Source: Mytilus californianus
Lineage: Eukaryota
Assembly (NCBI RefSeq): GCF_021869535.1
Contig: NW_026262604.1
Coordinates: 36,766,001 to 36,830,000 of the forward strand
Direction: 5' to 3'
DNA: 64,000 nt
Positions 2,906 to 58,025 of the stretch are shown one piece after another; the stretch's first letter is position 1; every line of letters begins with the position of its first letter. A program made the translations under genes and the position numbers. Under the pieces are notes generated by a model. That model had not been told where the DNA came from. It was given only the letters and a program-made list of their open reading frames with translations, and made no database searches.

Positions 2906-5039
2906 TAGGACACTAAAGAAACTAGAAACTAGAAAACGGATTAATTTAAGTTAACAGCTTTGTTTCCAGATCATATTAATTATTCGAAATCAATTGTATT
3001 AATAAGTAAATGCTAAATTGTGTACATTATTTAAATTGAATTTAATTAATAAAATATGTTAACACTAAAGAAACTAAACGCGCAGACTCCAAAATGTCTT
3101 ACTATAACTAACTAATTGAAATGATAAATTAAAAACGAATTGGTCATATTTAATATTATGTCATTTGAAGATCAAGACGAATATTAGGAGATTTGGTACT
3201 TTTTATTGACAGGTTTTGTGTAAGAGATGCTGACTACGAGTAAACAATAGTACAAAATGACATGAAAAGAGGATATTTATTGGTACAGTGTAGAAATAAA
3301 AAAAAAAAAAAAAATTTGAAATAAAAAGGTACATATGATATACTTGGTACTTTACAATCTTTGTGTGTTTAATAACATAGGTAATATGTCACGGTTACTC
3401 GTTTGCGCGAAATAAAAAGGGACGTAACTCTGCTCACGATGCGGAAAATATAACGAAAGCTCCAACACATTATGTATCGCAAATGTATTCAAATCGGCAC
3501 CTAGTCAATATGGAATCTAAAGAAAAATTCAAATCGGCACCTGAAGACGATTGAAATATGATAAGCTACTTGGTTCGATAATGTCATGAGTTTTATATTT
3601 AATTGCTGGAAAAAAACTACACTTATTCCATTAATGTGCTGGATTATCGATTGAGGTCATATGATTTACAATTAAGTGAAGTAAGTTCTATCTCCATATC
3701 ATTGACATATAATGAATAAAGTAGAAGGGTTAATGTTTCCCTTGCATGATCCAAGTTTACACAGGGTTTTAATTTGCTATCCATAGATGTAATGACCATG
3801 ATGACATTTAGTAACCTTTCCACATTTGACTAATCACTGCCATAATTTGTAATGTTATTTTTTGTAATTTCAGGATTTTAGTATTTTTGTTCAGACATAT
3901 TGTGTTTATCAAAGTATATCAATCTCCGCTCGAATCTAGTATTTTGTTTTATGTGCCAAATGTTATGTCATGCACACCTTTATAATTATATATTGTGTTA
4001 CTCGAGAATACTTTGTAAAAAATCATATTATTTGTGCATATATAGTAATCATCAATATGTGTATGTATCCTATAAACTGCATTTGCTTTTGAAATAAAGT
4101 ATTACCAAATATCGAACTGAATGGTACTGTGCTGTTCATTGATATAATTTGTATTCATATTTGGTTTTATCAAATAAGATATTAAACAATACTATTCCAC
4201 TTTTGTACATGATATAGTACCACGGATTCCCGAGTTTTATGTATACAGGACCTTTGTACCTTAAGTTTCGTGTATACAGGACCTGTGTACCTTATACAAG
4301 CAAATGAGTAAAAGCGACTGAATCAAATGAAGAATCCTCAAATTGAAGGTAAAGAAAGGAAATATTAAAAAGCCAAATGTATGACATTGGGAGAAGCAGT
4401 TATGAAGTTTGATATTGGTATAAAGGAGAGGTCATAAATCAGAGAAAACTTTAATCAAAGTTTATAGTATGTTGAGAAAAGTTCAGAACTAGCTATGTTG
4501 TTTGAAGAGGAATCTCAGGGGTCAAGACGTTTTTCTTTATCTTAAAGTCATATGAAACTTCAAATTAAAAAATATGATGCATATGTTTTTTTTTATAATT
4601 GAATGGCTAGTTTATATTATAAAATTTATGTACATATACGTTTCTATAATTTGTCCAAACTTAGAAGAAATTTACTTTTTTTTAATTGTTTGCTTCCAAT
4701 ATATAACTCAGCCTTGATAATAACAAAAAAGAATGGTTTGTTCTGTGGTAGTTTGAAAATAAATAACCTGACTTACAATGTATTGAAAATAAATAGCTCA
4801 GCATGTCTTTAAAGCCATTTTATGAATGCTATTCTAAAGTATGAGATGGCACATACTTTACTATGTGAATTACATTTTTGCTTTATCCTACATATTAGTC
4901 TTTTGATGTTGTACCTAAAAACTAAAAGTCTTACACTGAATCTATATATTTTGCTTTTGAGACCAAAATATTGTCGAAAAAGTAAAGAACGCAGAACTTG
5001 CGTTTCAGATTAAGAAAGGGTCTGGGAAACACGCAGAAT

Positions 5040-39133: not shown

Positions 39134-39288
39134 CTTGGTCAGGCTGTAAGTTCGACTCTGGCAACGTGGGCACATCCAGATGCCGCATGCTTTCCCTCAA
39201 GTGAATGAGGTCTCCTATTGTCTCGACTCAAAGTCTGTGGAGATCTTCATTCGTAAGAAAATTGAAGTTATCGTCTTCAATTTTCTCA
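39134..39288 (-). pseudogene. SAM-domain exon, 3' part (split by the LINE insertion)
   Basis: Removing the LINE and one TSD restores ISLYKLDLGTLYQKFLYEKIEDDNFNFLTNEDLHRL*VETIGDLIHLRES, a SAM pattern. Donor G|gtatct at 39134. Confidence 0.7.
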
Positions 39289-39434
39289 CCCCCCGGTGAA
39301 TCGCTATCCTTGCCGTGGTCGGGGGGCTTGCGTGTCTCAGTGACCCCAAGAGCTATGCCAGCTGGAACCTAGTCTCCTGGTAGGGTTACCCATGCTGGAC
39401 AGGTCGATGGGTAGAGGCCAGACTAAAGTGATCC
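39289..39434 (+). ncRNA. Predicted HDV-like self-cleaving ribozyme at the LINE 5' end
   Basis: P1 CCCCCCG(39289-95)/CGGGGGG(39320-26); P2 AUCGC/GUGAU; P3 (C)UAU/GUG(G) with loop CCUUGCC; large P4; J4/2 CUAA (39423-26). Nested double-pseudoknot order as in L1Tc/ingi ribozymes. Folded by eye. Confidence 0.7.
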
Positions 39435-40045
39435 GAACATCGTACGAGTTGCCCGATGTTTTGAATAAAATAGGCTCTCTAACCCGTTGGCCGTGGGTTG
39501 CTACCCGTGTCGGTGGTTGACGAGATTCTTGCGGATAAGGGCTGTAGCCAGACTCCTTACGGTCAGAAAATACCCGGACGGACGAGACTATTGTTCAATA
39601 AGCTGCTTTGGCTCCAATATCATCTAAACGGGAGGTCGGATGGACCCGGTTCGATCAATCGGCTGGTCATGTCGAGCCCTTCAGTTAATTCTCAACAATA
39701 AGCTTTCTTGTAACAATTTTCATTATATACACATGTGTTTTAAATTCAGCTTTTTATATTTCAGAAAACTGAAGAAAGCGATGGCTCATGGGTCAATCAA
39801 GTGGTACGCTTTCTATTTCGCTTGATGGATACGCTCTGCTTGTATACTATTCTTGGAACATCTGGTGCTTTCCGCAGTGGATCTTGGGTGCTAATTTTGG
39901 GGACCAGCTACGTTATACATGTTATACTTGGAGCTCGTTTTCAGCATTATCACTTGACCCCGGCTCGCCACGGAAACACAGCATCGCCCTTGTAGGCACT
40001 CCGAGGTGGGTGGATGACAAGAATGGTGAATCTTTCTCATTTCCT

Positions 40046-41532
40046 ATGGCACAACAAAACCAACCCTCTAAATCAGCTTTAAAATATAAAAAAAAAGTGA
40101 TGATTCAGTTCCCAGATTTATTGTAATAAAAGGAACAGATGAAAAACCAATTTCCAAAATATCTCCCTTTGTGATTCATTAACAAATTCAAAGCGTTGCT
40201 GGTACTGTAAAAAAAGTTTCAAAAATGAGATCAGGCAATTTGTCGGTTGAATGTTCCAACAAAAGTCAATCAACAAATTTGCTTACAATGACAACAATTA
40301 AAAACTTTCCTGTTTCTGCCTCTCCTCACAACAGTTTGAACAGCTGTAAGGGGATCATTCGAGACAGAAGTCAATACCTTGGTGACCTTACCGTGGAAGA
40401 AATCTGTGAGGAACTTTCAAGCCAAGGTGTAACTGATGTTGTTAGATTTCAAATAAAAAAGAATGGAAATATAATTAAATTAAATACATATCTATTGACC
40501 TTTAGAACTCCAACTCCTCCTCCATCTATTACTTTAGGTTGCTTCGGAATCAGAGTTGACAGGTTTATCCCTAACCCAATTCGATGCTTCACTTGTCAAA
40601 AGTTTGGTCATGGAAGCAAACAATGTCGTGGTACGCAGAGATGCTTCAAGTGTTCTGACGAAGGACACGAGGGAACAACCTGTCACTCTGAATCTTCTAA
40701 ATGCGTAAACTGTGGTGAATCCCATTTTTCATCATCTAGGGACTGCCCTGTTTACCTTAAAGAAAAAAATATTATCAAAATTAAAACAGAAAGAAACATC
40801 AGTTACCCAGAAGCTAAACAGATAGCTTCTGTTTCGAATGATCTCCACGTTTCGAACAGACCATCGTACGCCAGCAAAGTTGTCCGTTCATTCAGTCACG
40901 AGCATACACAAACTCGCATGACGTGGCCAATTGATGCTGAGACATTTACAATGCTGCCTGTTGAAACAGAACCTAACGATAAAATATTAATTCCAAGAAA
41001 ACCAACACCTTCTAAAACCAGTACTCAGTCAACTCAATCTTCCTTACAGAGCTCAATGTCATCATCTAAAAATAATCAAAAAAAGAAATCAAATAAAAAA
41101 GATGCAGTTAAATCAGACAGTTGGGGCGGTGAATCTGTCTGGGGTCTTCCCAGTGACATAGATGAATCTTCCATCTCCAATAGTCTTCCTTCATCTGCAT
41201 CTAAAAAGTTATCTTCTACATCCAGTACAAAGTCTACTAGAGCCCCGTCTCCTCTTCGTTCTCCAGAAAAGAAGGATGTCCAAAAGAAGCCAGTAAATAC
41301 ATCCTCTCAGAAGTCTTCTGATTCGAGGTCGCGGGGTAGGGGTCGAGGCGGAGTAAAGCAGCCGCGTGTGGTCCTGGAGATCGACGACTCTCCTCACACA
41401 ACAGATTTTCAACACTTATCGACGAAACTGAAATGGAAATCGAAAGTGTTCCGCCACCCGAAAGATCACAATCCCAGGGTGAGCGAAATAAGAATACTGG
41501 CAAACTCGACAGCATTCGCCTTTCTATTATAA
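40046..41532 (+). pseudogene. LINE ORF1 (pre-C2HC region plus three CCHC zinc knuckles)
   Basis: RSGNLSVEC...; CFTCQKFGHGSKQC; CFKCSDEGHEGTTC; CVNCGESHFSSSRDC. Frameshift and stop near the N-terminus. Confidence 0.88.
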
Positions 41533-41536
41533 AATC

Positions 41537-44500
41537 ATGACTAATATCATCCAATGGAATTGCCGAGGTCTTAAATAAATCTTCTCGAGTTAACGCTTCT
41601 AGTTCAGTCATTTTTACCTACTGCATTTTGTCTTCAAGAAACTCATTTAAAAGAAAGTGACAATGTATCTTTAAAAGGATACAACATGTATAGCACATTT
41701 TCTAAGGTAGACGAACGTGCTGCAGGCGGATCATCAATTTTTGTGAAGGACAACGTCATTCATAGCACAGTCCAACTCACCACGGATCTGCAGGCAGTTG
41801 CAATTCGTTTATCATTAGATAAAACAATTACATTATGTTCTATATATATTCCACCCAATTCAATTATAGATAAAGCTAAACTCAAAACCTCACTGATCAA
41901 TTACCCTCACCATTTATACTTATGGCGACCTCAATGCACACAACCCCTTGTGGGAAAGCAAGTCTCATAATATCAAAGGTAAGATCATTGAGAACTTTGT
42001 CTCTCAAGAAGGATTATGCATTTTTAATGATGGATCTAATACTTATCTTCATCCTGGAAACGGGTCTTATTCTGCTATTGATATCACTATTTGCGATCCC
42101 TCTCTTCTGGATTATTCATGGCGTGTTCATGATGATCTATGTGGAAGTGATCACTTTCCAATAGTACTTGAACATCTTTTTACTTCTGCCCAACAGAGAG
42201 TACCACGTTGGAAACTTGACAAGGCGGACTGGTCCTTGTTTGAGAATCTCTGTCAAGCGGAACTTCAGTCATAGATGTTTGAGACTGTACAAGATCCAAT
42301 TTTAACTTTTAATACAGTTTTAACGTCAATTGTTGACAGAACTATTCCTAAGACCTCGGCAAATCCGAAACATCCCAGCAAACCATGGTTTGATGATGCT
42401 TGTGATCAAGCAATAGGTGACCGTAAAAAATCTGAAAGACGGTTCAATCAACAACCAACGACGGAAAACTTGAGTAATTTCTGTGTTTTTCGCGCTAAGG
42501 CACGGCGGACTTGCAGGCAAGCACGACGAACGTCTTGGAAGAAATTTGTCTCGGAGATAACATCTCGCACTCCGATGACAAAAGTATGGAACATGATACA
42601 AAAGATAAAAGGTAAAAATTCTAAAGCCACAGTTAATCATTTAAAAAATGGCAATGATTTATTAACATCTGAAAAGGATATTGCCAAAAAGCTTGGTGAA
42701 ACTTTTGCGAAATCTTCTTCTTCTAACAACTACAGGGAAGATTTTAAAAAAGTTAAAAAAAATAAAAAAAAATTAAATTAAACTTTTAATAAAAAAATGG
42801 TGAAAATTATAATAAACTCTTTTCTCTTGAAGAACTTAAAACATCTCTGTCAAAAGCCCATGATACAGCTTGTGGGCCTGATAACATTCACTACCAACTG
42901 TTAAAACACTTGCCAGATTCCTCGCTGGAAGCTCTTTTGCAGCTTATGAATAACATCTGGGAATCTGGTGATTTACCATCAATCTGGAAGCTTGCAACCG
43001 TCGTGCCTATTCCAAAACCAAGTAAAGATCACACGGATCCTATTAATTATCGGCCAATTGCTCTTACCAGTTGTGTCTGTAAAACACTAGAACGGATGGT
43101 CAATGATCGCCTTGTTTGGTTCCTGGAATCTAATGGGCTTTTAGCCAATATCCAGTGTGGATTCCGCCAAGGTCGCAGTACTCTTGACTATCTTGTTCGA
43201 TTCGAATCCTTTGTCCGTAATGGTTTTGCGAAAAATGAACATGTAGTGTCGGTCTTTTTCGATCTAGAAAAAGCCTATGATACTGCATGGAAGTATGGTA
43301 TTTTAAAAGATCTCTTTGATATGGGGTAGAAAGGCAATATGCCAAATTTTATTTCGAATTTTCTATCTAACAGACAATTTAATGTTAGAGTAAATTCAAC
43401 CATGTCTGATCTGTATGATCAAGAGATGGGTGTCCCTCAGGGCAGTATTTTATCTGTTACATTATTTAGTCTTAAAATCAACAGCCTTGTTGAAGTTTTA
43501 AAAAGTAATATTGAAGGTTCATTGTATGTTGATGATTTTTTAATATGTTATAGAGGTAAAAATATGAATAACATAGAAAGACAATTACAGTTATGTCTTG
43601 GAAGAATTGAAAAATGGGCCTCGGAAAATGGGTTTAAATTTTCCACTTCAAAAACGGTCGGGATGCATTTTTGTAACAAAAGGAAATTGCATCTTGATCC
43701 AGAAATCTCTTTGTACGGCAACCCAATTAAAATGGTTGATGAAACCAAATTTCTTGGGTTAATTTTCGACAAAAAGTTAACTTTTCTACCCCATATCAAA
43801 ATGTTAAAATCGAAAATTTAAAAGCATTAGATATTTTAAAAGTTGTCGGCAGCACCGACTGGGGTGCTGATCGCAACATTTTACTTAATTTATATAGATC
43901 TCTAGTTAGATCTAAACTAGATTATGGCTCTATAGTGTATGGCTCTGCAAGGAAGTCCTACATACAGATTCTCGATGCTGTGCATCATCAGGGTTTGCGT
44001 CTCTGTCTTGGCGCATTTAAAACCTCACCAGTTGAGAGTCTGTATGTAGAGGCCGATGAGCACTCACTCTCTAACAGACGTTTGAAGCTTGGACTTCAAT
44101 ATGCTGTCAAACTAAAAGCCTACTCAGATAATCCTGCCTACAGCTGTGTTTTTAATCCAATTTATGAAGATATTTTTGCAAAACATGAAAATAAAATTCC
44201 TCCGTTAGGTATACGTTTAAAACCACATTTAGCTTCTTTTGATTTAAAATCTGTTGCTCAAGTTGAAACTTGCAAATGTCTTCCATGGGAACTTCCCAAA
44301 CCAAAAATGATATTTGAACACAATAAAAATAAAACAAATCCTCTTTTAATTCAGCAACACTTTGCTGAAATCAAAGCCAATTATTCAGATTTTTCAACTG
44401 TCTATACTAATGGATCAAAAGATGGCGACAGAGTTGCATCTGCTGCTGTCTTCAGGGACAGAGCTGCAACTCTCCGTTTGCCATCTGATGCATCGATCTT

Positions 44501-45029
44501 TACTGCTGAAGCAGAAGCAATAATTTTGGCTTTGAAATTTATTGCTTCTTCAGATAAATCCAAATTTATTATATGTTCTGATTCACTTTCATGCTTACAA
44601 GCTATACAAAATACTAACTGTGAAATACCATATACCGATTTTAAATCTAATATTAGAGAATATGTTTTTAATATATTGAAAAATGAATGGAGTAAAAAAG
44701 ATGATAATAAATTACATGAAATTAAACCTAATTTAGGTAAACCTCTCAATAATTTTATGTGCAGAAAAAATCAGTGTGTTATTTCTAGATGTCGTATTGG
44801 TCATACTAGAATAACACACGAATATCTTTTAAAAAATGAAGTAGAACCACAATGTATACCTTGTAACTGCAAGTATACTATTAAACATGTTTTAATCAAT
44901 TGTATTGACTTTGCTGATATTCGTAAGAAGCATTTCAATGTCAATAATATGTATGATTTATTTAATAATGTTCCATTTACAAATATTGTTTCATTCTTAA
45001 AAGAAGTTGGAATATATTCTAAAATATAA
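41537..45029 (+). pseudogene. LINE ORF2 (APE, RT, RNase H, CCHC)
   Basis: IIQWNCRGL, CLQETH, IDIT, SDHFPI; YRPIALTS, FFDLEKAYD, GVPQGSILS, LYVDD; VYTNGSK..AEAEAI..CSDSLS; CIPCNCKYTIKHVLINC. Several stops and frameshifts plus a deletion in RNase H. Confidence 0.92.
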
Positions 45030-45271
45030 AAATGTTATTCTATTTAAAACGATTTTAAATTTTATCACGTTATCTTAATGTTCATTTTTATTTGTAAATA
45101 ATCAATTTGCTTTAATCTAGAATTTTAGTTTATTGAAGGGCCTTTTGTCTGATTTTAAGAATATGCTTTAAATTGTAAAAAAAATTCGAATTAGCTCTCG
45201 CCGCGATATAGCCTTGTTGTGCTAATGCGGCGTTAAGCAACCAACAATCAATCATCAATCAATTTTTCTCA

Positions 45272-45417: not shown

Positions 45418-45464
45418 TTCTGTAATTGATTTCCCGACTTTTACTAAATCATCATAATGATACA

Positions 45465-45760
45465 TCCACTGAACATATAGTTCATTGAACCAAGTATAAT
45501 ACTGATGCGATTATGAACATAATGAATAATCCACCGAATATAAAGAAACTGGGACCACTGAAGGTAATACATAAGGTACTGCAAATTAATATTGAATCTA
45601 CTGAACATAATGAAAAATGCATTGAATATAGCGTCAGAAGTACCGAAAATAATTTTAATACCACTGTATATAATAATGAAACTACTGAACATAATAACCA
45701 AAGCACCGAAAATAATGTAAAGACTACTGAACATAATATGAAAACTACTGAAAAATAATT
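45465..45760 (+). repeat. Degenerate 21-bp minisatellite (ACTACTGAACATAAT...)
   Basis: Heptad TTEHNxx periodicity in the 45513-45758 reading frame. Confidence 0.7.
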
Positions 45761-53290: not shown

Positions 53291-55273
53291 TGAGAGATAG
53301 GCGGCAAAGCATAGAATTTTCGAAAAAAATTTCTGATCTTTTTTTACTAAAAAACATAAATTAAGTGTAAAATGCACTAATTTCACGGTTCCTGATGTGT
53401 GCATGTTATGGTTAAAATTTAAGGGTTCGACAGTTCTGTTGCTGTTTTCTATCCATAAATTGTATATTATAAAATGATTGGATGAATCCAAAGATATGTA
53501 CCAATATATTTGATGAGGGATTTGTCAGTACAAAATGGACATAGACAATTTCCACCTAGCTAAGTCAATCACTGAAATAGAGATCACAACTAGCATTTGA
53601 AGATTGCTTTGCAAATTTGTGATTCGCACCCCAGATGCATCTGATCATACATACTAATATAATTGATGTTTTACTTTATTCAAAAATAAATCCACAAAGA
53701 CATTTATTGAGAAATTCTAGTGATGACTTCTGAACAAATCTATCGTCTAAGTCATAGGGTTCACCAGAAGCTTCTTCCTCGGATTCCGTTGAGAAAAATC
53801 GTCATTAATTTTTCATAGTCCAGTTCATTATTGTTTTTACGGACATACAAAAGTAACAGGGCATTTCAGCGTTCTTTTCCCATTGTACTGCGCGAGAATG
53901 TTTAAGTATACTCTAACGTCGAGTTTGCCCTTTCTGTGGAACTGGATGTTACGCTGGTCAATGAAAGTAACGATGTTTGGAATATCTTGCTACACACTCT
54001 TGGGTCTGTTATGGGAGACATTATTGTAGACGATTTTTCGGTCTTGTTTCAGAGTTGAAACTCCTATCTAAAAGAGTTAGGATATGACACGTTAACTTTG
54101 TACTAACCGTCAATGTCTTCGATAGTATCATCTGATATTTGATGAAAGTTGCTTGGAATCAAGGCCAATGCCCTTACAAAGGAAACAGCATGTTCACCAA
54201 ACCGAATATTTAACTGCTGAGTCTAAGAATGGTAGAAAAGTAACGAACTGTTGCACAAAAATTAAATATAGGGGAAATGCCGAAGTTAACTTAATCATTT
54301 TAAAAAGTGCAGGTAAAAAGGGTGAGTACGCCCCCCGCTGGGTCCGCAACTGTAAATAGCTATAAAACCAGGTTTTATCCACCATTTTTTACATTAGAAA
54401 TGTCTGTACAAAGTCAGGAATATGACAGACGTTTTCCAATAGTTTAAAACTTTTAATTTTGCCATTTGACAAAAGACTTTCCGTTTTGAATTTTCCCTGG
54501 AGTTCAGAATGTCTGTTATTTACTTTCTTTTTTCAACATTAAATTGTTTATTGTATTGTTGGATTTTGTATTTCGCATCTCGGTATCATAGGATCTTGTA
54601 TGCATGCTTAACTTTGTTGATGACTAGTTGTTGATAGTCACATAACAAGTTATTGTCGTTTACGAGTTGAAGGTCTAACATTTGGATAATTCCTGCTGAT
54701 AAAGCAAGTTTGTTAGAAGTAGATGACATCGACATGACTTCTAAGGTGTTTTAATGTGGCATTATTTATAGGGTAACGCCTTTTGGCCACGAAGCATCAC
54801 AGCCTCTATGACGTATGGTTTATGGCTTATGAAAATTCTTTGGTTATAACGGGAGAGCTTTAAAAAGCACAATTACTGTAGGTTATGATATATCCATTAT
54901 CTTCGTAATATCTTCGCAACAAGTTGTTGGTGATGAAACAAGTTCGTTAGAAGTAGCATGAATAGGTTTTTAGTTTGAAGGTCGATTTTGTTGATCACGA
55001 ACAGAGTTTGTGATAAGGTCATCTATTACTGGTTCTATAATATCTGTTGGATACACGTTGGTATACCGCGCGAGAAGATGGCCTGTTATTTGCCATTGAC
55101 CAATTTCAAAAGTGCCTGTTGCTCTTATGAAGTGATTAATGTATATTGTTGTCAGGTCTAGCTCTTATGAAGTGATTAATGTATATTGTTGTCAGGTCTA
55201 ATTTCCTGCTTATTGTTGACACAAAGAAAGAAGTGTTTTTTTTTTTTTTTTTTTTTTTTTTCTGTTTATTTCC

Positions 55274-55694
55274 CCCCAAGGGTGACTGGGGAATAGAAGT
55301 ATGGTCACCATTGGTCTTCCTCCGACCGGCAGTAAAACCCGTGCTAAAGTGGGGCGTCCGTTTGGCTGTGCGGGATGTACAAATTTGCAGCCACGTCCGG
55401 TCAGAATGGGGACGTTAAATCCGATGCCTCGTGTAAAGAGAGTGCCACGCTTTTTGCACGTTAAGAACCCTTGCAACAACTCTTTGAGGGGTCCGTAGGT
55501 GACCTGTTGCAAGGCTAAATTTCTGTCCCTATCCAATATACCCTCATTTCCCGTGGCAGTCTAAATTTCTCCGACCTTAATCCCGGAAGCCCTTATTACA
55601 GAACCTACCTATTGTATTTATTGTTAACTTGTTCTCGTCCTGAATATTCATGAAATATTTGCCACTGGACGTTAAGCAACCAACAATCAATCAA
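55274..55694 (+). mobile_element. Meta-domain SINE, full-length, 14-bp TSD
   Basis: TSD tctgtttatttccc at 55261-55274 and 55695-55708, next to a long poly-T. Confidence 0.9.
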
Positions 55695-58025
55695 TCTGTT
55701 TATTTCCCTTTCATCCACCTTCATCGGTATATATTTCCGGCCAGTATGTGCGTGGTATGACAACAAACGTGTCATTAGGTTACATGTACTCATTTACTCT
55801 GCTGCAAATATATAAACACATATTCATTTGAACACCAATTGCTAGAACAAATAATGTATTCAGATCCAAAACAAAATGCTATTACTAGTATAGCCTTGAA
55901 GGATCATCGGATTCAATTTCAGATTAGGGATAAATGATCCCATTGAAAGATTATAATTTTGCTTTGCATTTCTTATCTTTCGGTTTTTATTATATCAAAT
56001 GATTTTAAAACGGGTTGGCTTTTTGGATATCTGTTCAATGCATGTCTTGTGTTAATTAATGTTATTGATCATAAAAAATATCCAAATTGGGTATGAACTT
56101 TCCAGCTCTGATTCTGGTAAACTTTTACTAATTTAAAAGTGAATCGTAACTGTTTGTTTTCTCTATTAGATTAGATCAATTCAAATTTTAACTCTGGCAT
56201 TAGTTAGAAATATTCGTCCATTTGAAAAAAGGATAAATTTATTTCATTATTAGAATGTCAATATTTTCTGTAATTATTTCATTGAATTTTTGTTTCATGT
56301 CGTACAGGAAATGTATTTTTCCTGTGAGTTCCAATTCCGTTTTAAGTCATTAAGACAGTTGTCTATAGTTATGGATTGTCTTTTCTGGTTGTCTTGTAAA
56401 CCTAAAAAAACATCAGCAAGTGAGTCATCATTTCAAGCTGTATAATTTCACTTTAATTTGTTCTTTTCTGTCGAAAGTTTCCTTTTAACGCTTGTTATTT
56501 CACATTAATTGCACTAGAAGAATCTGAACACAAGGCCAAAACACGAAGATTTAACTTCATTCTTCTTGAATCTTTGGTCTTTTTCAATTTGGATTTCGGT
56601 TAAAGTTGTGTGATATTTTTGCACTTATTGATTTTCTGGAAGGGGTGAAAACTAGACATTGCCTAATGTTCGATATGATAATATTTAAAACACTGTTTCC
56701 TTGTTGCGAAACAGAATGTCTCTGTATGCCGATTACTCCATCAAGCGCACGCGGGAATTTGACGCGTCTGCAAAAATCATGGTCGCTGCTTTGGCCTAGC
56801 GTTTTATTGCATCGTTGCAACTAGCTAAGATGACCGGTACTTCTCTAGGGAACTGGTTACTCACATTTTGTATTTAGATACCAGGAATCCGTGTTGAGCT
56901 ACAGATTCAAAACGACCAGAACCTGGCACCAAAGCGTTACATTATAAATAGGGTAAAAAAAATTAATATACCCAATAAAAAAACAAAGTATTTGTTTTAA
57001 CCGTTGACAATATGATAAATCTCTTTCAAATTGACTTGTTTTTTTATACACCGTTACAATTTATTTATGTCTTGCTTCATGAAATTACCGTTACATTTAA
57101 TGTAACTGGACAGCGATTTCTAATACGAAGTTAATATCTATATTAATTTGTGAGTCTTGTTCAGAATAAATGAGTCGTAGTTAATTCTAAACGCATTAGA
57201 AAAGATTGTCTTATATGATACCTTCTTGTAAATATTTGCAAAAAAAAACAACGTTGTTTTTTTTAATAGATGGGGTTTAGTTGCATATGAGTTAACTATC
57301 CATGAGATACCAACTGACACGGATTTAACACAAAAGCTACATAGACAGGTCAACATTTGACCTCCAACCACGAACCGTTAGTGTAGAATTGATTTCTTTT
57401 CTTACTCTATTTCTTCGTGTGTCTATATTCATCCATTGATCCACATAATATAAAACACTTCATCTGCTTGGCAAATCGTTACGTTTGTTTTGTGCTTTGC
57501 ACGATATTTGTTTTGGTCACATATCTTCTACAGTTTATATTGAATTTATTTACAACTCATAGTATACATTGATTTGTTTTAATTAAAGACCGGGTCTGGG
57601 GTATAAATAGCAGCCAATAAGAAAAATGAAGGGAAATTCAAGTTTCTTTGCAGGTTTCATGATTGGGAAGCATTTTTATGTTTTACTAAATAAATGATAT
57701 AAAGTTTAACTTGATATTATATTCATAAGTGCAGAACATACTTATGAAAAAAATATAAGTTAAAACAAAGTAATTTGATAAATTAGTTTTTATGTAATTG
57801 TAAAATAAAATTCAGAAGTGGTCAATTTTTTGAATTTCAAATGGTTTGATTGACTCACTTGAGGCGGAGCCTCCTAATGTTTGTAAACACAACAGAATGC
57901 ACATGCTACAGTCTAAATAGACCTCCTCAGAATACTAATAGTTTAAAAAAATTCTCAAAGTATGTTTGAAAATGTGTTAATTGGCTTAATGATATTGTTC
58001 ACAAATTTAATTTGTATATATATAA

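What the first reader, a model, noticed from the sequence alone, without database searches (positions are those of the whole stretch)
39289..39434. Full-length I-group LINE starts exactly at a predicted HDV-like ribozyme
Seen: the TSD places the element's first base at 39289, the first base of a nested double-pseudoknot fold (P1 C-run/G-run, P3 with CCUUGCC loop, J4/2 CUAA, P2 closing at 39433). Established: HDV-like ribozymes process the 5' ends of R2, RTE and L1Tc/ingi retrotransposons, and the L1Tc ribozyme also starts with C and uses CUAA. From recall, the long P4 (GCTTGCGTG...GACCC.AAGAGCTATG...CCTGGTAGGG) resembles RTE 5'UTRs. Inference: an RNase H-containing mollusc LINE uses self-cleavage to define its 5' end, and the module may have been exchanged between clades. 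The P1/P1.1 register is ambiguous.
Basis: partly seen in the sequence, partly recalled or inferred. Interest (0 to 1): 0.75.

Follow-up and report, generated by a model that had tools for sequence, protein, structure and literature searches.

The report
HDV-like ribozyme fold heading mussel LINE
The first 146 bases of an abundant mussel jumping gene (a LINE) fold like the small self-cutting "HDV-type" RNA that some other LINEs use to trim their own transcripts; related elements keep the fold through matching base changes, but actual cutting has not been shown.

Summary
A 5,975-bp non-LTR retrotransposon (CCHC ORF1; APE-RT-RNase H ORF2; CAAT-repeat tail; 8-bp duplication TTTTCTCA) starts at 39289. 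An empty-site contig and 48 other genomic copies put the 5' end at the same C-run.

Bases 39289-39434 fit the HDV-like nested double pseudoknot:
- P1, 7 bp
- P2, 8 bp in the family consensus
- P3/L3, UUGCCGU
- a 1-bp P1.1
- a 94-nt branched P4
- J4/2 CUAA, with C39423 as the candidate catalytic base

Rfam does not recognise the mussel sequence. Divergent relatives nonetheless keep P1, P2 and P4 through compensatory changes. An abalone relative carries a compact, near-canonical HDV-like motif at the same place (Rfam RF02682, 29 bits, below threshold).

Cleavage is untested. The few RNA reads available mostly run uncut across the site. The window copy is dead: ORFs are broken and G11>A weakens P2.

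I found no support for exchange of the module with RTE elements.

Verdict: a new member of a known kind, since HDV-like ribozymes already head R2, R4, Dong, Baggins, RTE and L1Tc elements. The scan had already flagged this same family on other DNA of this genome (s1-318119, s1-307213, s1-330656, s1-330734).

The parts
39281..39288 (+). 5' copy of the target-site duplication TTTTCTCA
   Evidence: Repeated at 45264-45271. The empty-site contig carries a single copy.
39289..39295 (+). P1 5' strand CCCCCCG. The predicted cleavage site is immediately 5' of C39289, which is the element's first base.
   Evidence: Pairs 7/7 with 39320-39326. Relatives have CCCACCC/GGGTGGG, CTCTACC/GGTAGAG, CTTCCCC/GGGGGGG and GGCACTC/GAGTGCT.
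39296..39297 (+). J1/2 (GU)
   Evidence: Descriptor fit.
39298..39305 (+). P2 5' strand. The family consensus is GGATCGCT; the window copy has A at 39299, giving an A.C mismatch.
   Evidence: Pairs with 39427-39434. All 10 RNA reads show G at 39299. P2 covaries in relatives.
39306..39309 (+). P3 5' strand A(U)CC, with U39307 bulged
   Evidence: Relatives L033, L091, L092, L093 and the abalone locus have a clean ACC/GGT; L038 has GCG/CGC.
39310..39316 (+). L3, UUGCCGU. U at position 1 and CG at positions 5-6 match HDV (UCCUCGC, from my recall). G39312 is the candidate P1.1 partner of C39327.
   Evidence: The conserved C and G of L3 are described in PMC3774820.
39317..39319 (+). P3 3' strand GGU
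   Evidence: Invariant in all homologs.
39320..39326 (+). P1 3' strand CGGGGGG, directly after P3
39327..39327 (+). C39, the single-pair P1.1 candidate (with G39312)
   Evidence: Conserved in the mussel-type relatives. The abalone relative has the canonical CC/GG instead. Not testable by covariation within the group.
39328..39421 (+). P4 domain, 94 nt: base helix, two further helices, then a junction carrying two hairpins
   Evidence: RNAalifold and pair counts on 8 sequences. The 25 P4 pairs (P4 pairs's table) include 12 with changes on both sides, e.g. U47-A129 > U.G (window) > C-G (second mussel family).
39423..39426 (+). J4/2 CUAA; C39423 is the candidate catalytic cytosine
   Evidence: The C is invariant in all 8 aligned sequences, and a CNAA stands at the same place in the abalone locus and L038. 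Variants are CUAA, CGAA and CAAA.
39427..39434 (+). P2 3' strand AGUGAUCC
39435..39787 (+). Rest of the 5'UTR, beginning with a local hairpin ACATCG...CGATGT at 39437-39462
   Evidence: Intact family copies have a 577-aa ORF1, which places the ATG at 39788. The UTR from about element nt 187 onward is conserved in L031, L032, L033 and L036.
39788..41532 (+). ORF1 (homologs named CCHC-type), broken by stops in the window copy. The longest open piece is 40225-41532.
41948..45029 (+). ORF2 remnants (APE, RT, RNase H-like), fragmented in the window copy
   Evidence: Pfam PF14529, PF00078 and PF13456. Intact homologs carry PF03372/PF14529, PF00078 and PF00075.
45230..45263 (+). 3' tail ...GCGTTAAGCAACCAACAATCAATCATCAATCAA
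   Evidence: The SINE at about 55272-55695 ends in the same tail.
45264..45271 (+). 3' copy of the target-site duplication TTTTCTCA

Best explanation
Window 39289-39434 is the 5' module of a Nimb-like (I-superfamily) LINE of Mytilus and encodes an HDV-like self-cleaving ribozyme.

Proposed mechanism:
1. The element is transcribed, often as part of a longer host or read-through transcript.
2. The nascent RNA folds into the nested double pseudoknot: P1 1-7/32-38, P2 10-17/139-146, P3 18-21/29-31, L3 22-28, P1.1 G24-C39, P4 40-133.
3. C135 (C39423) in J4/2 catalyses cleavage of the bond just 5' of C1.
4. The retrotransposition template therefore begins at C39289, and every full-length cDNA copy starts with the same CCCCCC.

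Shown here: the exact 5' end, the fit to the fold, and evolutionary maintenance of P1, P2 and P4 at the RNA level.
Inferred: catalysis, co-transcription, and any extra role of the conserved 94-nt P4 (protein binding, translation or promoter, by analogy with R2 and L1Tc).

The copy in this window is a dead insertion, so the inferred activity belongs to the family consensus.
For: 1. Boundary. The TSD, an empty-site contig, and 48 other copies that start at the same C-run (41 of the 49 with exactly six C's). There are 376 5' modules in the genome.

2. Descriptor. It hits exactly at base 1, with about 1e-4 chance per position.

3. Covariation.
- P1 is CCCCCCG/CGGGGGG in mussel, CCCUCCG (U.G) in L103, CCCACCC/GGGUGGG in L033, CUCUACC/GGUAGAG in L091, CUUCCCC/GGGGGGG in L092 and GGCACUC/GAGUGCU in abalone.
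- P2 is GGAUCGCU/AGUGAUCC, GGAUCGC/GCGAUCC, GGGCU(U)GUC/GACAGCCC, AGAUUGC/GCAAUCU, GGAUGC/GCAUCC, GGGUUUG/CAAACCC and GAAGAGC/GCUCUUC.
- In shuffle tests anchored on L3 and CNRA, the informative lineages give p of about 0.001-0.03 for P1 (all lineages except L038) and about 0.001-0.05 for P2 (all except L091's bulged helix).
- On alignment A2 (P1 + P4, 32 pairs), 94.9% of cells are paired. 16 pairs changed on both sides, against 6.3 +/- 1.6 in shuffles (0/500) and 2-4 when partners are slid.

4. Core residues. The C of J4/2 is invariant, and L3 keeps U1 and C5-G6 (PMC3774820).

5. Abalone relative. The ORF1 homolog locus L031 (47% identical over the aligned part) has a compact motif at L031:3339-3396, just upstream of the 5'UTR block it shares with the mussel. 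It scores 29 bits, E 0.18, to Rfam RF02682 HDV-F-prausnitzii.

6. Precedent. Active HDV-like ribozymes head R2, R4, Dong, Baggins, RTE and L1Tc. L1Tc/ingi ribozymes have C1 as the +1 base and a 1-bp P1.1 (PMC3774820, PMC6765202, PMC4035085, PMC3185411).

7. No excess of G at position -1 (14/49), which a capped 5' end might have left. This is weak evidence.
Against: - No cleavage assay exists.
- In raw RNA-seq of the same species only 25 reads were laid. About 8 of the roughly 10 reads over base 1 continue into unlike upstream sequence, and no pile-up of read starts appears at 39289. These reads could be uncut RNA or DNA carry-over.
- Rfam finds no HDV-family match in the mussel sequence, even in a 166-nt search.
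- P3 needs a bulged U in the mussel version.
- P1.1 is a single, non-covarying pair.
- The +1 pair is C-G rather than the G.U of HDV.
- A precise 5' end can also come from an internal promoter.
- L038 has an imperfect P1 (6/7, not significant). Several other relatives' 5' regions (L034, L035, L036, L045) showed no convincing motif, though their true 5' ends are unknown.
Confidence: 0.65

Rival explanations
1. This is a conserved structured 5'UTR domain with HDV-like topology that no longer cleaves, or never did. The 5' end is set by an internal Pol II promoter that starts at C1. The RNA fold serves translation, ORF-protein binding or stability, as the R2 5' pseudoknot also does.
For: - RNA reads mostly cross the site uncut.
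- There is no Rfam hit.
- P3 and P1.1 are weak.
- The strong primary-sequence conservation of P4 and L3 across 33-53% ORF1 relatives exceeds what a stem needs and would suit a protein-binding or promoter element.
- L1Tc Pr77 is both a promoter and a ribozyme (PMC3383444).
Against: - The exact set of residues that catalysis needs is invariant or correctly placed: the J4/2 C in CNAA directly before P2', L3 U1/C5/G6, and P1' abutting P3.
- P1 starts exactly at base 1 in every lineage with a readable P1.
- The abalone relative keeps a minimal motif with almost no P4.
- There is no extra-G signature at the 5' junction.
Confidence: 0.22
2. The ribozyme module was acquired laterally from an RTE-type or other LINE clade.
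For: HDV-like ribozymes are scattered across LINE clades (PMC6765202, PMC3774820).
Against: - The module sits upstream of ORF1 homologs of 33-53% identity and changes gradually along with them.
- The downstream 5'UTR block is also shared.
- No RTE sequence was found to match.
- The claimed likeness could not be checked with any tool result.
Confidence: 0.05
3. The resemblance is due to chance: a GC-rich 5'UTR that happens to satisfy a loose descriptor.
For: The loose descriptor hits about once per 8.5 kb, and MFE stability is unremarkable.
Against: - The hit is exactly at base 1.
- P1, P2 and P4 covary.
- The abalone relative has a sub-threshold Rfam hit at the equivalent place.
Confidence: 0.02

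Closest known systems
L1TcRz / Pr77 HDV-like ribozymes of trypanosomatid L1Tc/ingi-clade LINEs (PMC3185411, PMC4035085)
   Same: - The ribozyme occupies the very first bases of an APE-RT-RNase H LINE.
- The +1 base is C, paired to G in a P1 whose 5' strand begins with C.
- P1.1 is only 1-2 bp.
- Non-autonomous partner elements exist.
   Different: - The mussel module is 146 nt, with a conserved, branched 94-nt P4, against 77 nt for L1TcRz.
- No promoter activity has been tested.
- The host is an animal (bivalve).
- I could not establish sequence similarity, because no L1Tc sequence was available to the tools.
R2, R4, Dong, Baggins and RTE 5' HDV-like ribozymes (PMC3774820, PMC6765202; Ruminski et al. 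2011 as cited there)
   Same: - Same double-pseudoknot order.
- P1 of 6-7 bp sets the cleavage site.
- P1' abuts P3/L3.
- P4 is highly variable.
- A catalytic C precedes P2'.
- The role is to release the element RNA from a co-transcript.
   Different: - Those elements belong to other LINE clades, and R2, R4 and Dong are site-specific.
- Many of them have been shown to cleave in vitro; this one has not.
Rfam RF02682 HDV-F-prausnitzii and the HDV ribozyme core
   Same: The abalone relative (L031:3339-3396) matches the model end to end: G1.U closing pair, ACC/GGU P3, UCCUCGU L3, CC/GG P1.1, GCUAA.
   Different: - The abalone score of 29 bits is below the gathering score of 44.
- The mussel sequence does not score at all. 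It differs by its long P4, its L3 of UUGCCGU, its C1-G pair and its 1-bp P1.1.
Large HDV-like ribozymes with peripheral domains (PMC4908430, abstract only)
   Same: An oversized peripheral domain is attached to a minimal core.
   Different: Whether the mussel P4 activates folding is unknown. Its sequence conservation hints at an added function.

Membership tests
HDV-like self-cleaving ribozyme | Strand order P1-P2-P3-L3-P3'-P1'-(P1.1)-P4-J4/2-P2', forming a nested double pseudoknot | tested here: met
   My own descriptor hits at 39289-39434 and nowhere else in the element's 5'UTR.
HDV-like self-cleaving ribozyme | P1 of about 7 bp starting at the cleavage site, with its 3' strand immediately after P3 (PMC3774820) | tested here: met
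   7/7 Watson-Crick pairs. Five different P1 sequences in relatives stay fully paired. On A2, 4 of the 7 P1 pairs changed on both sides.
HDV-like self-cleaving ribozyme | P2 of at least 5 bp joining the segment 5' of P3 to the segment right after J4/2 | tested here: met
   8 bp in the consensus; 1 pair + A.C mismatch + 6 pairs in the window copy. Seven different P2 sequences pair in relatives; p 0.001-0.05 in all but L091's bulged helix.
HDV-like self-cleaving ribozyme | P3 of 3 bp closing an L3 of 7-8 nt with conserved C and G | tested here: met
   L3 is UUGCCGU, with U1 and C5-G6. P3 is ACC/GGU in relatives but needs a bulged U39307 in the mussel; L038 has GCG/CGC.
HDV-like self-cleaving ribozyme | P1.1, 1-2 bp between L3 and the bases after P1' | tested here: inconclusive
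   Only G39312-C39327 is possible, and it is invariant in the mussel-type set, so there is no covariation. Abalone has CC/GG. One-pair P1.1 is known in L1TcRz (PMC3185411).
HDV-like self-cleaving ribozyme | Catalytic C at the start of J4/2 (C-N-R-A) directly before P2' | tested here: met
   C39423 in CUAA. The C is invariant in all 8 aligned sequences, and CNAA is also present in L031 and L038.
HDV-like self-cleaving ribozyme | Match to a curated Rfam HDV-family covariance model at gathering score | tested here: not met
   No hit at E<=10 on 10 kb or on 166 nt. The abalone relative scores 29 bits against a gathering score of 44.
HDV-like self-cleaving ribozyme | Mg2+-dependent self-scission giving a 5'-OH product | not testable with these tools
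   Needs a bench assay.
HDV-like self-cleaving ribozyme | Element RNA in vivo ends at +1 | tested here: inconclusive
   Only 25 reads were laid. About 8 of 10 over base 1 run on upstream, and there is no pile-up of starts.
I-superfamily (Nimb-like) non-LTR retrotransposon | ORF1 plus an ORF2 with APE, RT and C-terminal RNase H | tested here: met
   Pfam hits in the window fragments and in intact homologs. Sources name the ORF1 homologs CCHC-type.
I-superfamily (Nimb-like) non-LTR retrotransposon | RT-domain phylogeny placing it in Nimb | not tested
No reference RT set was at hand.

The most novel reading that the evidence does not exclude
The 5' HDV-like ribozyme is an ancestral, vertically inherited feature of the I/Nimb/ingi group of LINEs, shared between molluscs and trypanosomatid L1Tc/ingi. 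In the bivalve lineage it has gained a conserved 94-nt branched P4 domain with a second job of its own, such as ORF-protein recognition, cap-independent translation or promoter activity. That would make the 146-nt head a composite control module rather than a bare ribozyme.
Probability: 0.25. Interest if true: 0.6.

Novelty: new member of a known kind. Interest (0 to 1): 0.45.

Why it matters
If the family consensus cleaves, this would be an HDV-like ribozyme in a mollusc Nimb-type LINE; two full-text searches of the held paper library listed no paper with such a case in its title or abstract.
- It would explain why hundreds of full-length copies share one exact 5' end.
- It would extend the link between 5' ribozymes and RNase H-bearing LINEs beyond trypanosomes.
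- It would offer a natural series, from the compact abalone core to the mussel core with its large conserved P4, for studying how peripheral domains tune HDV-like ribozymes.
- For annotation, it gives a sharp marker for full-length copies of an abundant bivalve LINE.

Tried and rejected
- Rfam cmscan on 10 kb and on 166 nt gave no HDV-family hit for the mussel sequence.
- Plain RNAfold stability is not distinctive.
- An exact-word TSD search of 9 nt or more missed the 8-bp duplication. It was found by reading the 3' end.
- A search of the genome itself for P1' variants (non-G at position 4) gave only 6 scattered mutant copies. There is no compensated subfamily inside this genome.
- Upstream regions of the ORF1 relatives L032, L034, L035, L036, L045, L046 and L047 gave no convincing motif. 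Several are cut by contig ends or 5'-truncated, so this is not evidence of absence.
- L038 fits P2, P3, L3 and J4/2 but has an imperfect P1.
- In the metagenome pattern scan, 61 stretches matched and most are unrelated bacterial chance matches. Only L091-L093, L103, L106, L111, L118, L121, L127 and L128 are homologous, and L111/L121 and L118/L128 are 5'-truncated or rearranged at L3.
- MAFFT did not align the P2 strands in register, so P2 was counted with my own anchored script rather than with the count of structure pairs.
- RNA-seq contigs that end at 39289-39291 were not used as evidence, because assembly graphs break at repeat borders.
- The SINE head at 55272 was tested against the descriptor and does not fit the HDV-like order.
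- RT-clade phylogeny was not attempted, for lack of reference sequences.

Full report
**The element and its 5' end**

The window carries a 5,975-bp non-LTR retrotransposon on the + strand, at 39289-45263.
- Its 3' end is a CAAT-type repeat tail followed by TTTTCTCA. The same octamer lies directly before 39289.
- A 405-nt contig from a public mollusc RNA-seq run reads 39189-39288 and then continues with the bases that follow 45271. That is the empty target site with one copy of the duplication, which fixes both borders.
- ORF1 is open from 40225 to 41532. Intact family copies have a 577-aa frame, so the ATG is at 39788 and the 5'UTR is 499 nt.
- ORF2 survives as fragments with APE, RT and a weak RNase H-like match. 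Intact relatives show APE, RT and RNase H.
- ORF1 homolog names identify the host as Mytilus and the protein as CCHC-type.
- The copy in the window is dead.

All 29 other copies fetched with the 5' region begin homology at element base 1, with unrelated flanks. Among 49 copies, 41 start with exactly six C's and none shares sequence further 5'. The genome holds 376 copies of the 5' module at up to two mismatches.

**The fold**

Numbering takes 39289 as base 1.

| Feature | Position | Detail |
|---|---|---|
| P1 | 1-7 / 32-38 | seven G-C or C-G pairs |
| J1/2 | 8-9 | GU |
| P2 | 10-17 / 139-146 | 8 bp in the consensus; the window copy has G11>A |
| P3 | A18, C20, C21 / G29-U31 | U19 bulged |
| L3 | 22-28 | UUGCCGU |
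| P1.1 | G24-C39 | one possible pair |
| P4 | 40-133 | 94-nt branched domain |
| J4/2 | 135-138 | CUAA, C135 = C39423 |

- RNA reads show G at base 11, matching the consensus rather than the window copy.
- A descriptor I wrote for this order of helices hits exactly at base 1. It gives 15 hits in 128 kb of window, counting both strands, and the other 14 have A/T- or G.U-rich P1 helices.
- Ordinary MFE folding is not unusually stable.
- Rfam gives no HDV-family match, even when only 166 nt are searched.

**Comparative evidence**

I searched for ORF1 homologs and fetched their contigs. I also scanned public metagenome contigs for the L3-P1'-P4 core. The homologous modules found are listed below. 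ORF1 identity is to the window copy over the aligned part; a dash means no ORF1 identity was measured for that locus.

| Locus | ORF1 identity | P1 | P2 | Other |
|---|---|---|---|---|
| L033 | 53% | CCCACCC/GGGUGGG | GGAUCGC/GCGAUCC | clean ACC/GGU P3; CGAA |
| L091 | - | CUCUACC/GGUAGAG | GGGCU(U)GUC/GACAGCCC | CAAA |
| L092 | - | CUUCCCC/GGGGGGG | AGAUUGC/GCAAUCU | - |
| L093 | 33% | C7/G7 | GGAUGC/GCAUCC | - |
| L103/L106/L127 | 86-96% (near-identical mussel-type copies) | CCCUCCG (one U.G) | as in mussel | - |
| L038 | 39% | imperfect | GGGUUUG/CAAACCC | P3 GCG/CGC; L3 UUGUCGA |

- With positions anchored on L3 and on CNRA, P1 is 7/7 in nine of ten lineages and P2 is 6-9 bp in nine of the ten; L091's bulged P2 has only 5 contiguous bp. 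Shuffle probabilities are about 0.001-0.03 for P1 (except L038) and about 0.001-0.05 for P2 (except L091's bulged helix), in every informative lineage, although the sequences differ.
- On the eight-sequence alignment A2, the consensus of P1 plus a branched P4 has 32 pairs, with 94.9% of cells paired. 16 pairs changed on both sides, against 6.3 +/- 1.6 in shuffles (0 of 500) and 2-4 when partners are slid.
- A second mussel family (P0016-like ORF1) shows U47-A129 > C-G in the P4 base helix, and the window copy has the U.G intermediate.
- The C of J4/2, the GGU of P3' and the whole of L3 are invariant.

**The abalone relative**

In the Haliotis cracherodii locus L031 (ORF1 47% identical over the aligned part), a 58-nt compact motif lies at 3339-3396. 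That is just upstream of the 5'UTR block that aligns with mussel UTR bases from about 190 onward.
- It matches Rfam RF02682 (HDV-F-prausnitzii) end to end at 29 bits, E 0.18. This is below the gathering score of 44.
- It has the textbook features: a G1.U closing pair, ACC/GGU P3, UCCUCGU L3, CC/GG P1.1 and GCUAA.
- The mussel module reads as the same core with an expanded P4 and a P1.1 reduced to one pair (C-G flipped to G-C).
- I could not confirm that 3339 is the first base of the abalone element.

**What is not shown**

Catalysis is untested.
- In raw RNA-seq of the same species only 25 reads fell on the 600-nt stretch.
- About 8 of the roughly 10 reads over base 1 continue for 80-100 nt into unlike upstream sequence.
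- No pile-up of read starts is seen at 39289.
- Both mate orientations are about equally represented, so DNA carry-over or unstranded read-through cannot be told apart.
- This counts mildly against efficient cleavage in vivo, but it is too thin to decide.
- The -1 base is G in 14 of 49 copies. That is no clear extra-G footprint of a capped 5' end, and it is weak evidence.

**Comparison with what is known**

- HDV-like ribozymes at LINE 5' ends are established for R2, R4, Dong, Baggins, RTE and L1Tc (PMC3774820, PMC6765202).
- The family tolerates P1 of 6-7 bp, P2 of 5 bp or more, any P4 and few fixed bases (PMC3774820).
- Active L1Tc/ingi ribozymes have C1 as the +1 base and a one-pair P1.1 (PMC4035085, PMC3185411).
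- The two library searches I ran listed no paper whose title or abstract describes such a ribozyme in a mollusc LINE.
- A SINE in the same window ends in the LINE's tail. Published work pairs Meta SINEs with Nimb LINEs of the I superfamily (PMC11481361). This suggests a Nimb assignment, but I did not run an RT phylogeny.
It is found with ORF1 relatives down to 33% identity.

**Verdict**

This is a real, evolutionarily maintained HDV-like fold exactly at the head of an abundant mussel LINE.
- It most likely acts as a self-cleaving 5' processing ribozyme. My confidence in that full mechanism, cleavage included, is about 0.65.
- The main rival is a non-catalytic structured 5'UTR combined with an internal promoter.
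- It is a new member of a known kind.
- The scan had already noted this family on other DNA of this genome. Those notes gave the abalone lead and the observation of mostly uncut reads. I reproduced both independently here.

Noticed in passing
window 55272-55695: A SINE flanked by the duplication CTGTTTATTTCC(C) ends in the same tail as the LINE (CGTTAAGCAACCAACAATCAATCAAT). Its head starts with a C-run and contains GCTAAAGTGGGG, but it does not fit the HDV-like strand order in my descriptor.
   Followed up: partly
window 39189-39288 joined to 45272 onward (run X12, contig 1): An empty-site version of this locus exists in a public mollusc RNA-seq assembly, with 5 differences in 100 nt. The insertion is therefore polymorphic or specific to one species or lineage.
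   Followed up: partly
L031:2742-2951 (-) and L031:1563-1759 (-): A full U2 snRNA gene (Rfam 122.7 bits) lies about 390 nt upstream of the abalone element's ribozyme-like motif, and a weaker U2 match lies further up.
   Followed up: no
L033:1217-2064 and 3378-4224; L063:663-838 and 3099-3253: Two copies of the 5' module occur in tandem a few kb apart on one contig. The L033 upstream copy has a broken P1. The L063 copies share the same flank and carry expanded G-runs in P1'.
   Followed up: no
L048, L062 (5' junctions): A few copies have the initial C-run expanded to 12 or 19 C's.
   Followed up: no
window 39437-39462: A perfect 6-bp hairpin (ACATCG...CGATGT) directly follows the P2 3' strand. 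It might insulate the fold from downstream sequence.
   Followed up: no
window 45451-45756: Just downstream of the element there is an array of degenerate 21-nt repeats (units of the type ACTACTGAACATAAT...).
   Followed up: no
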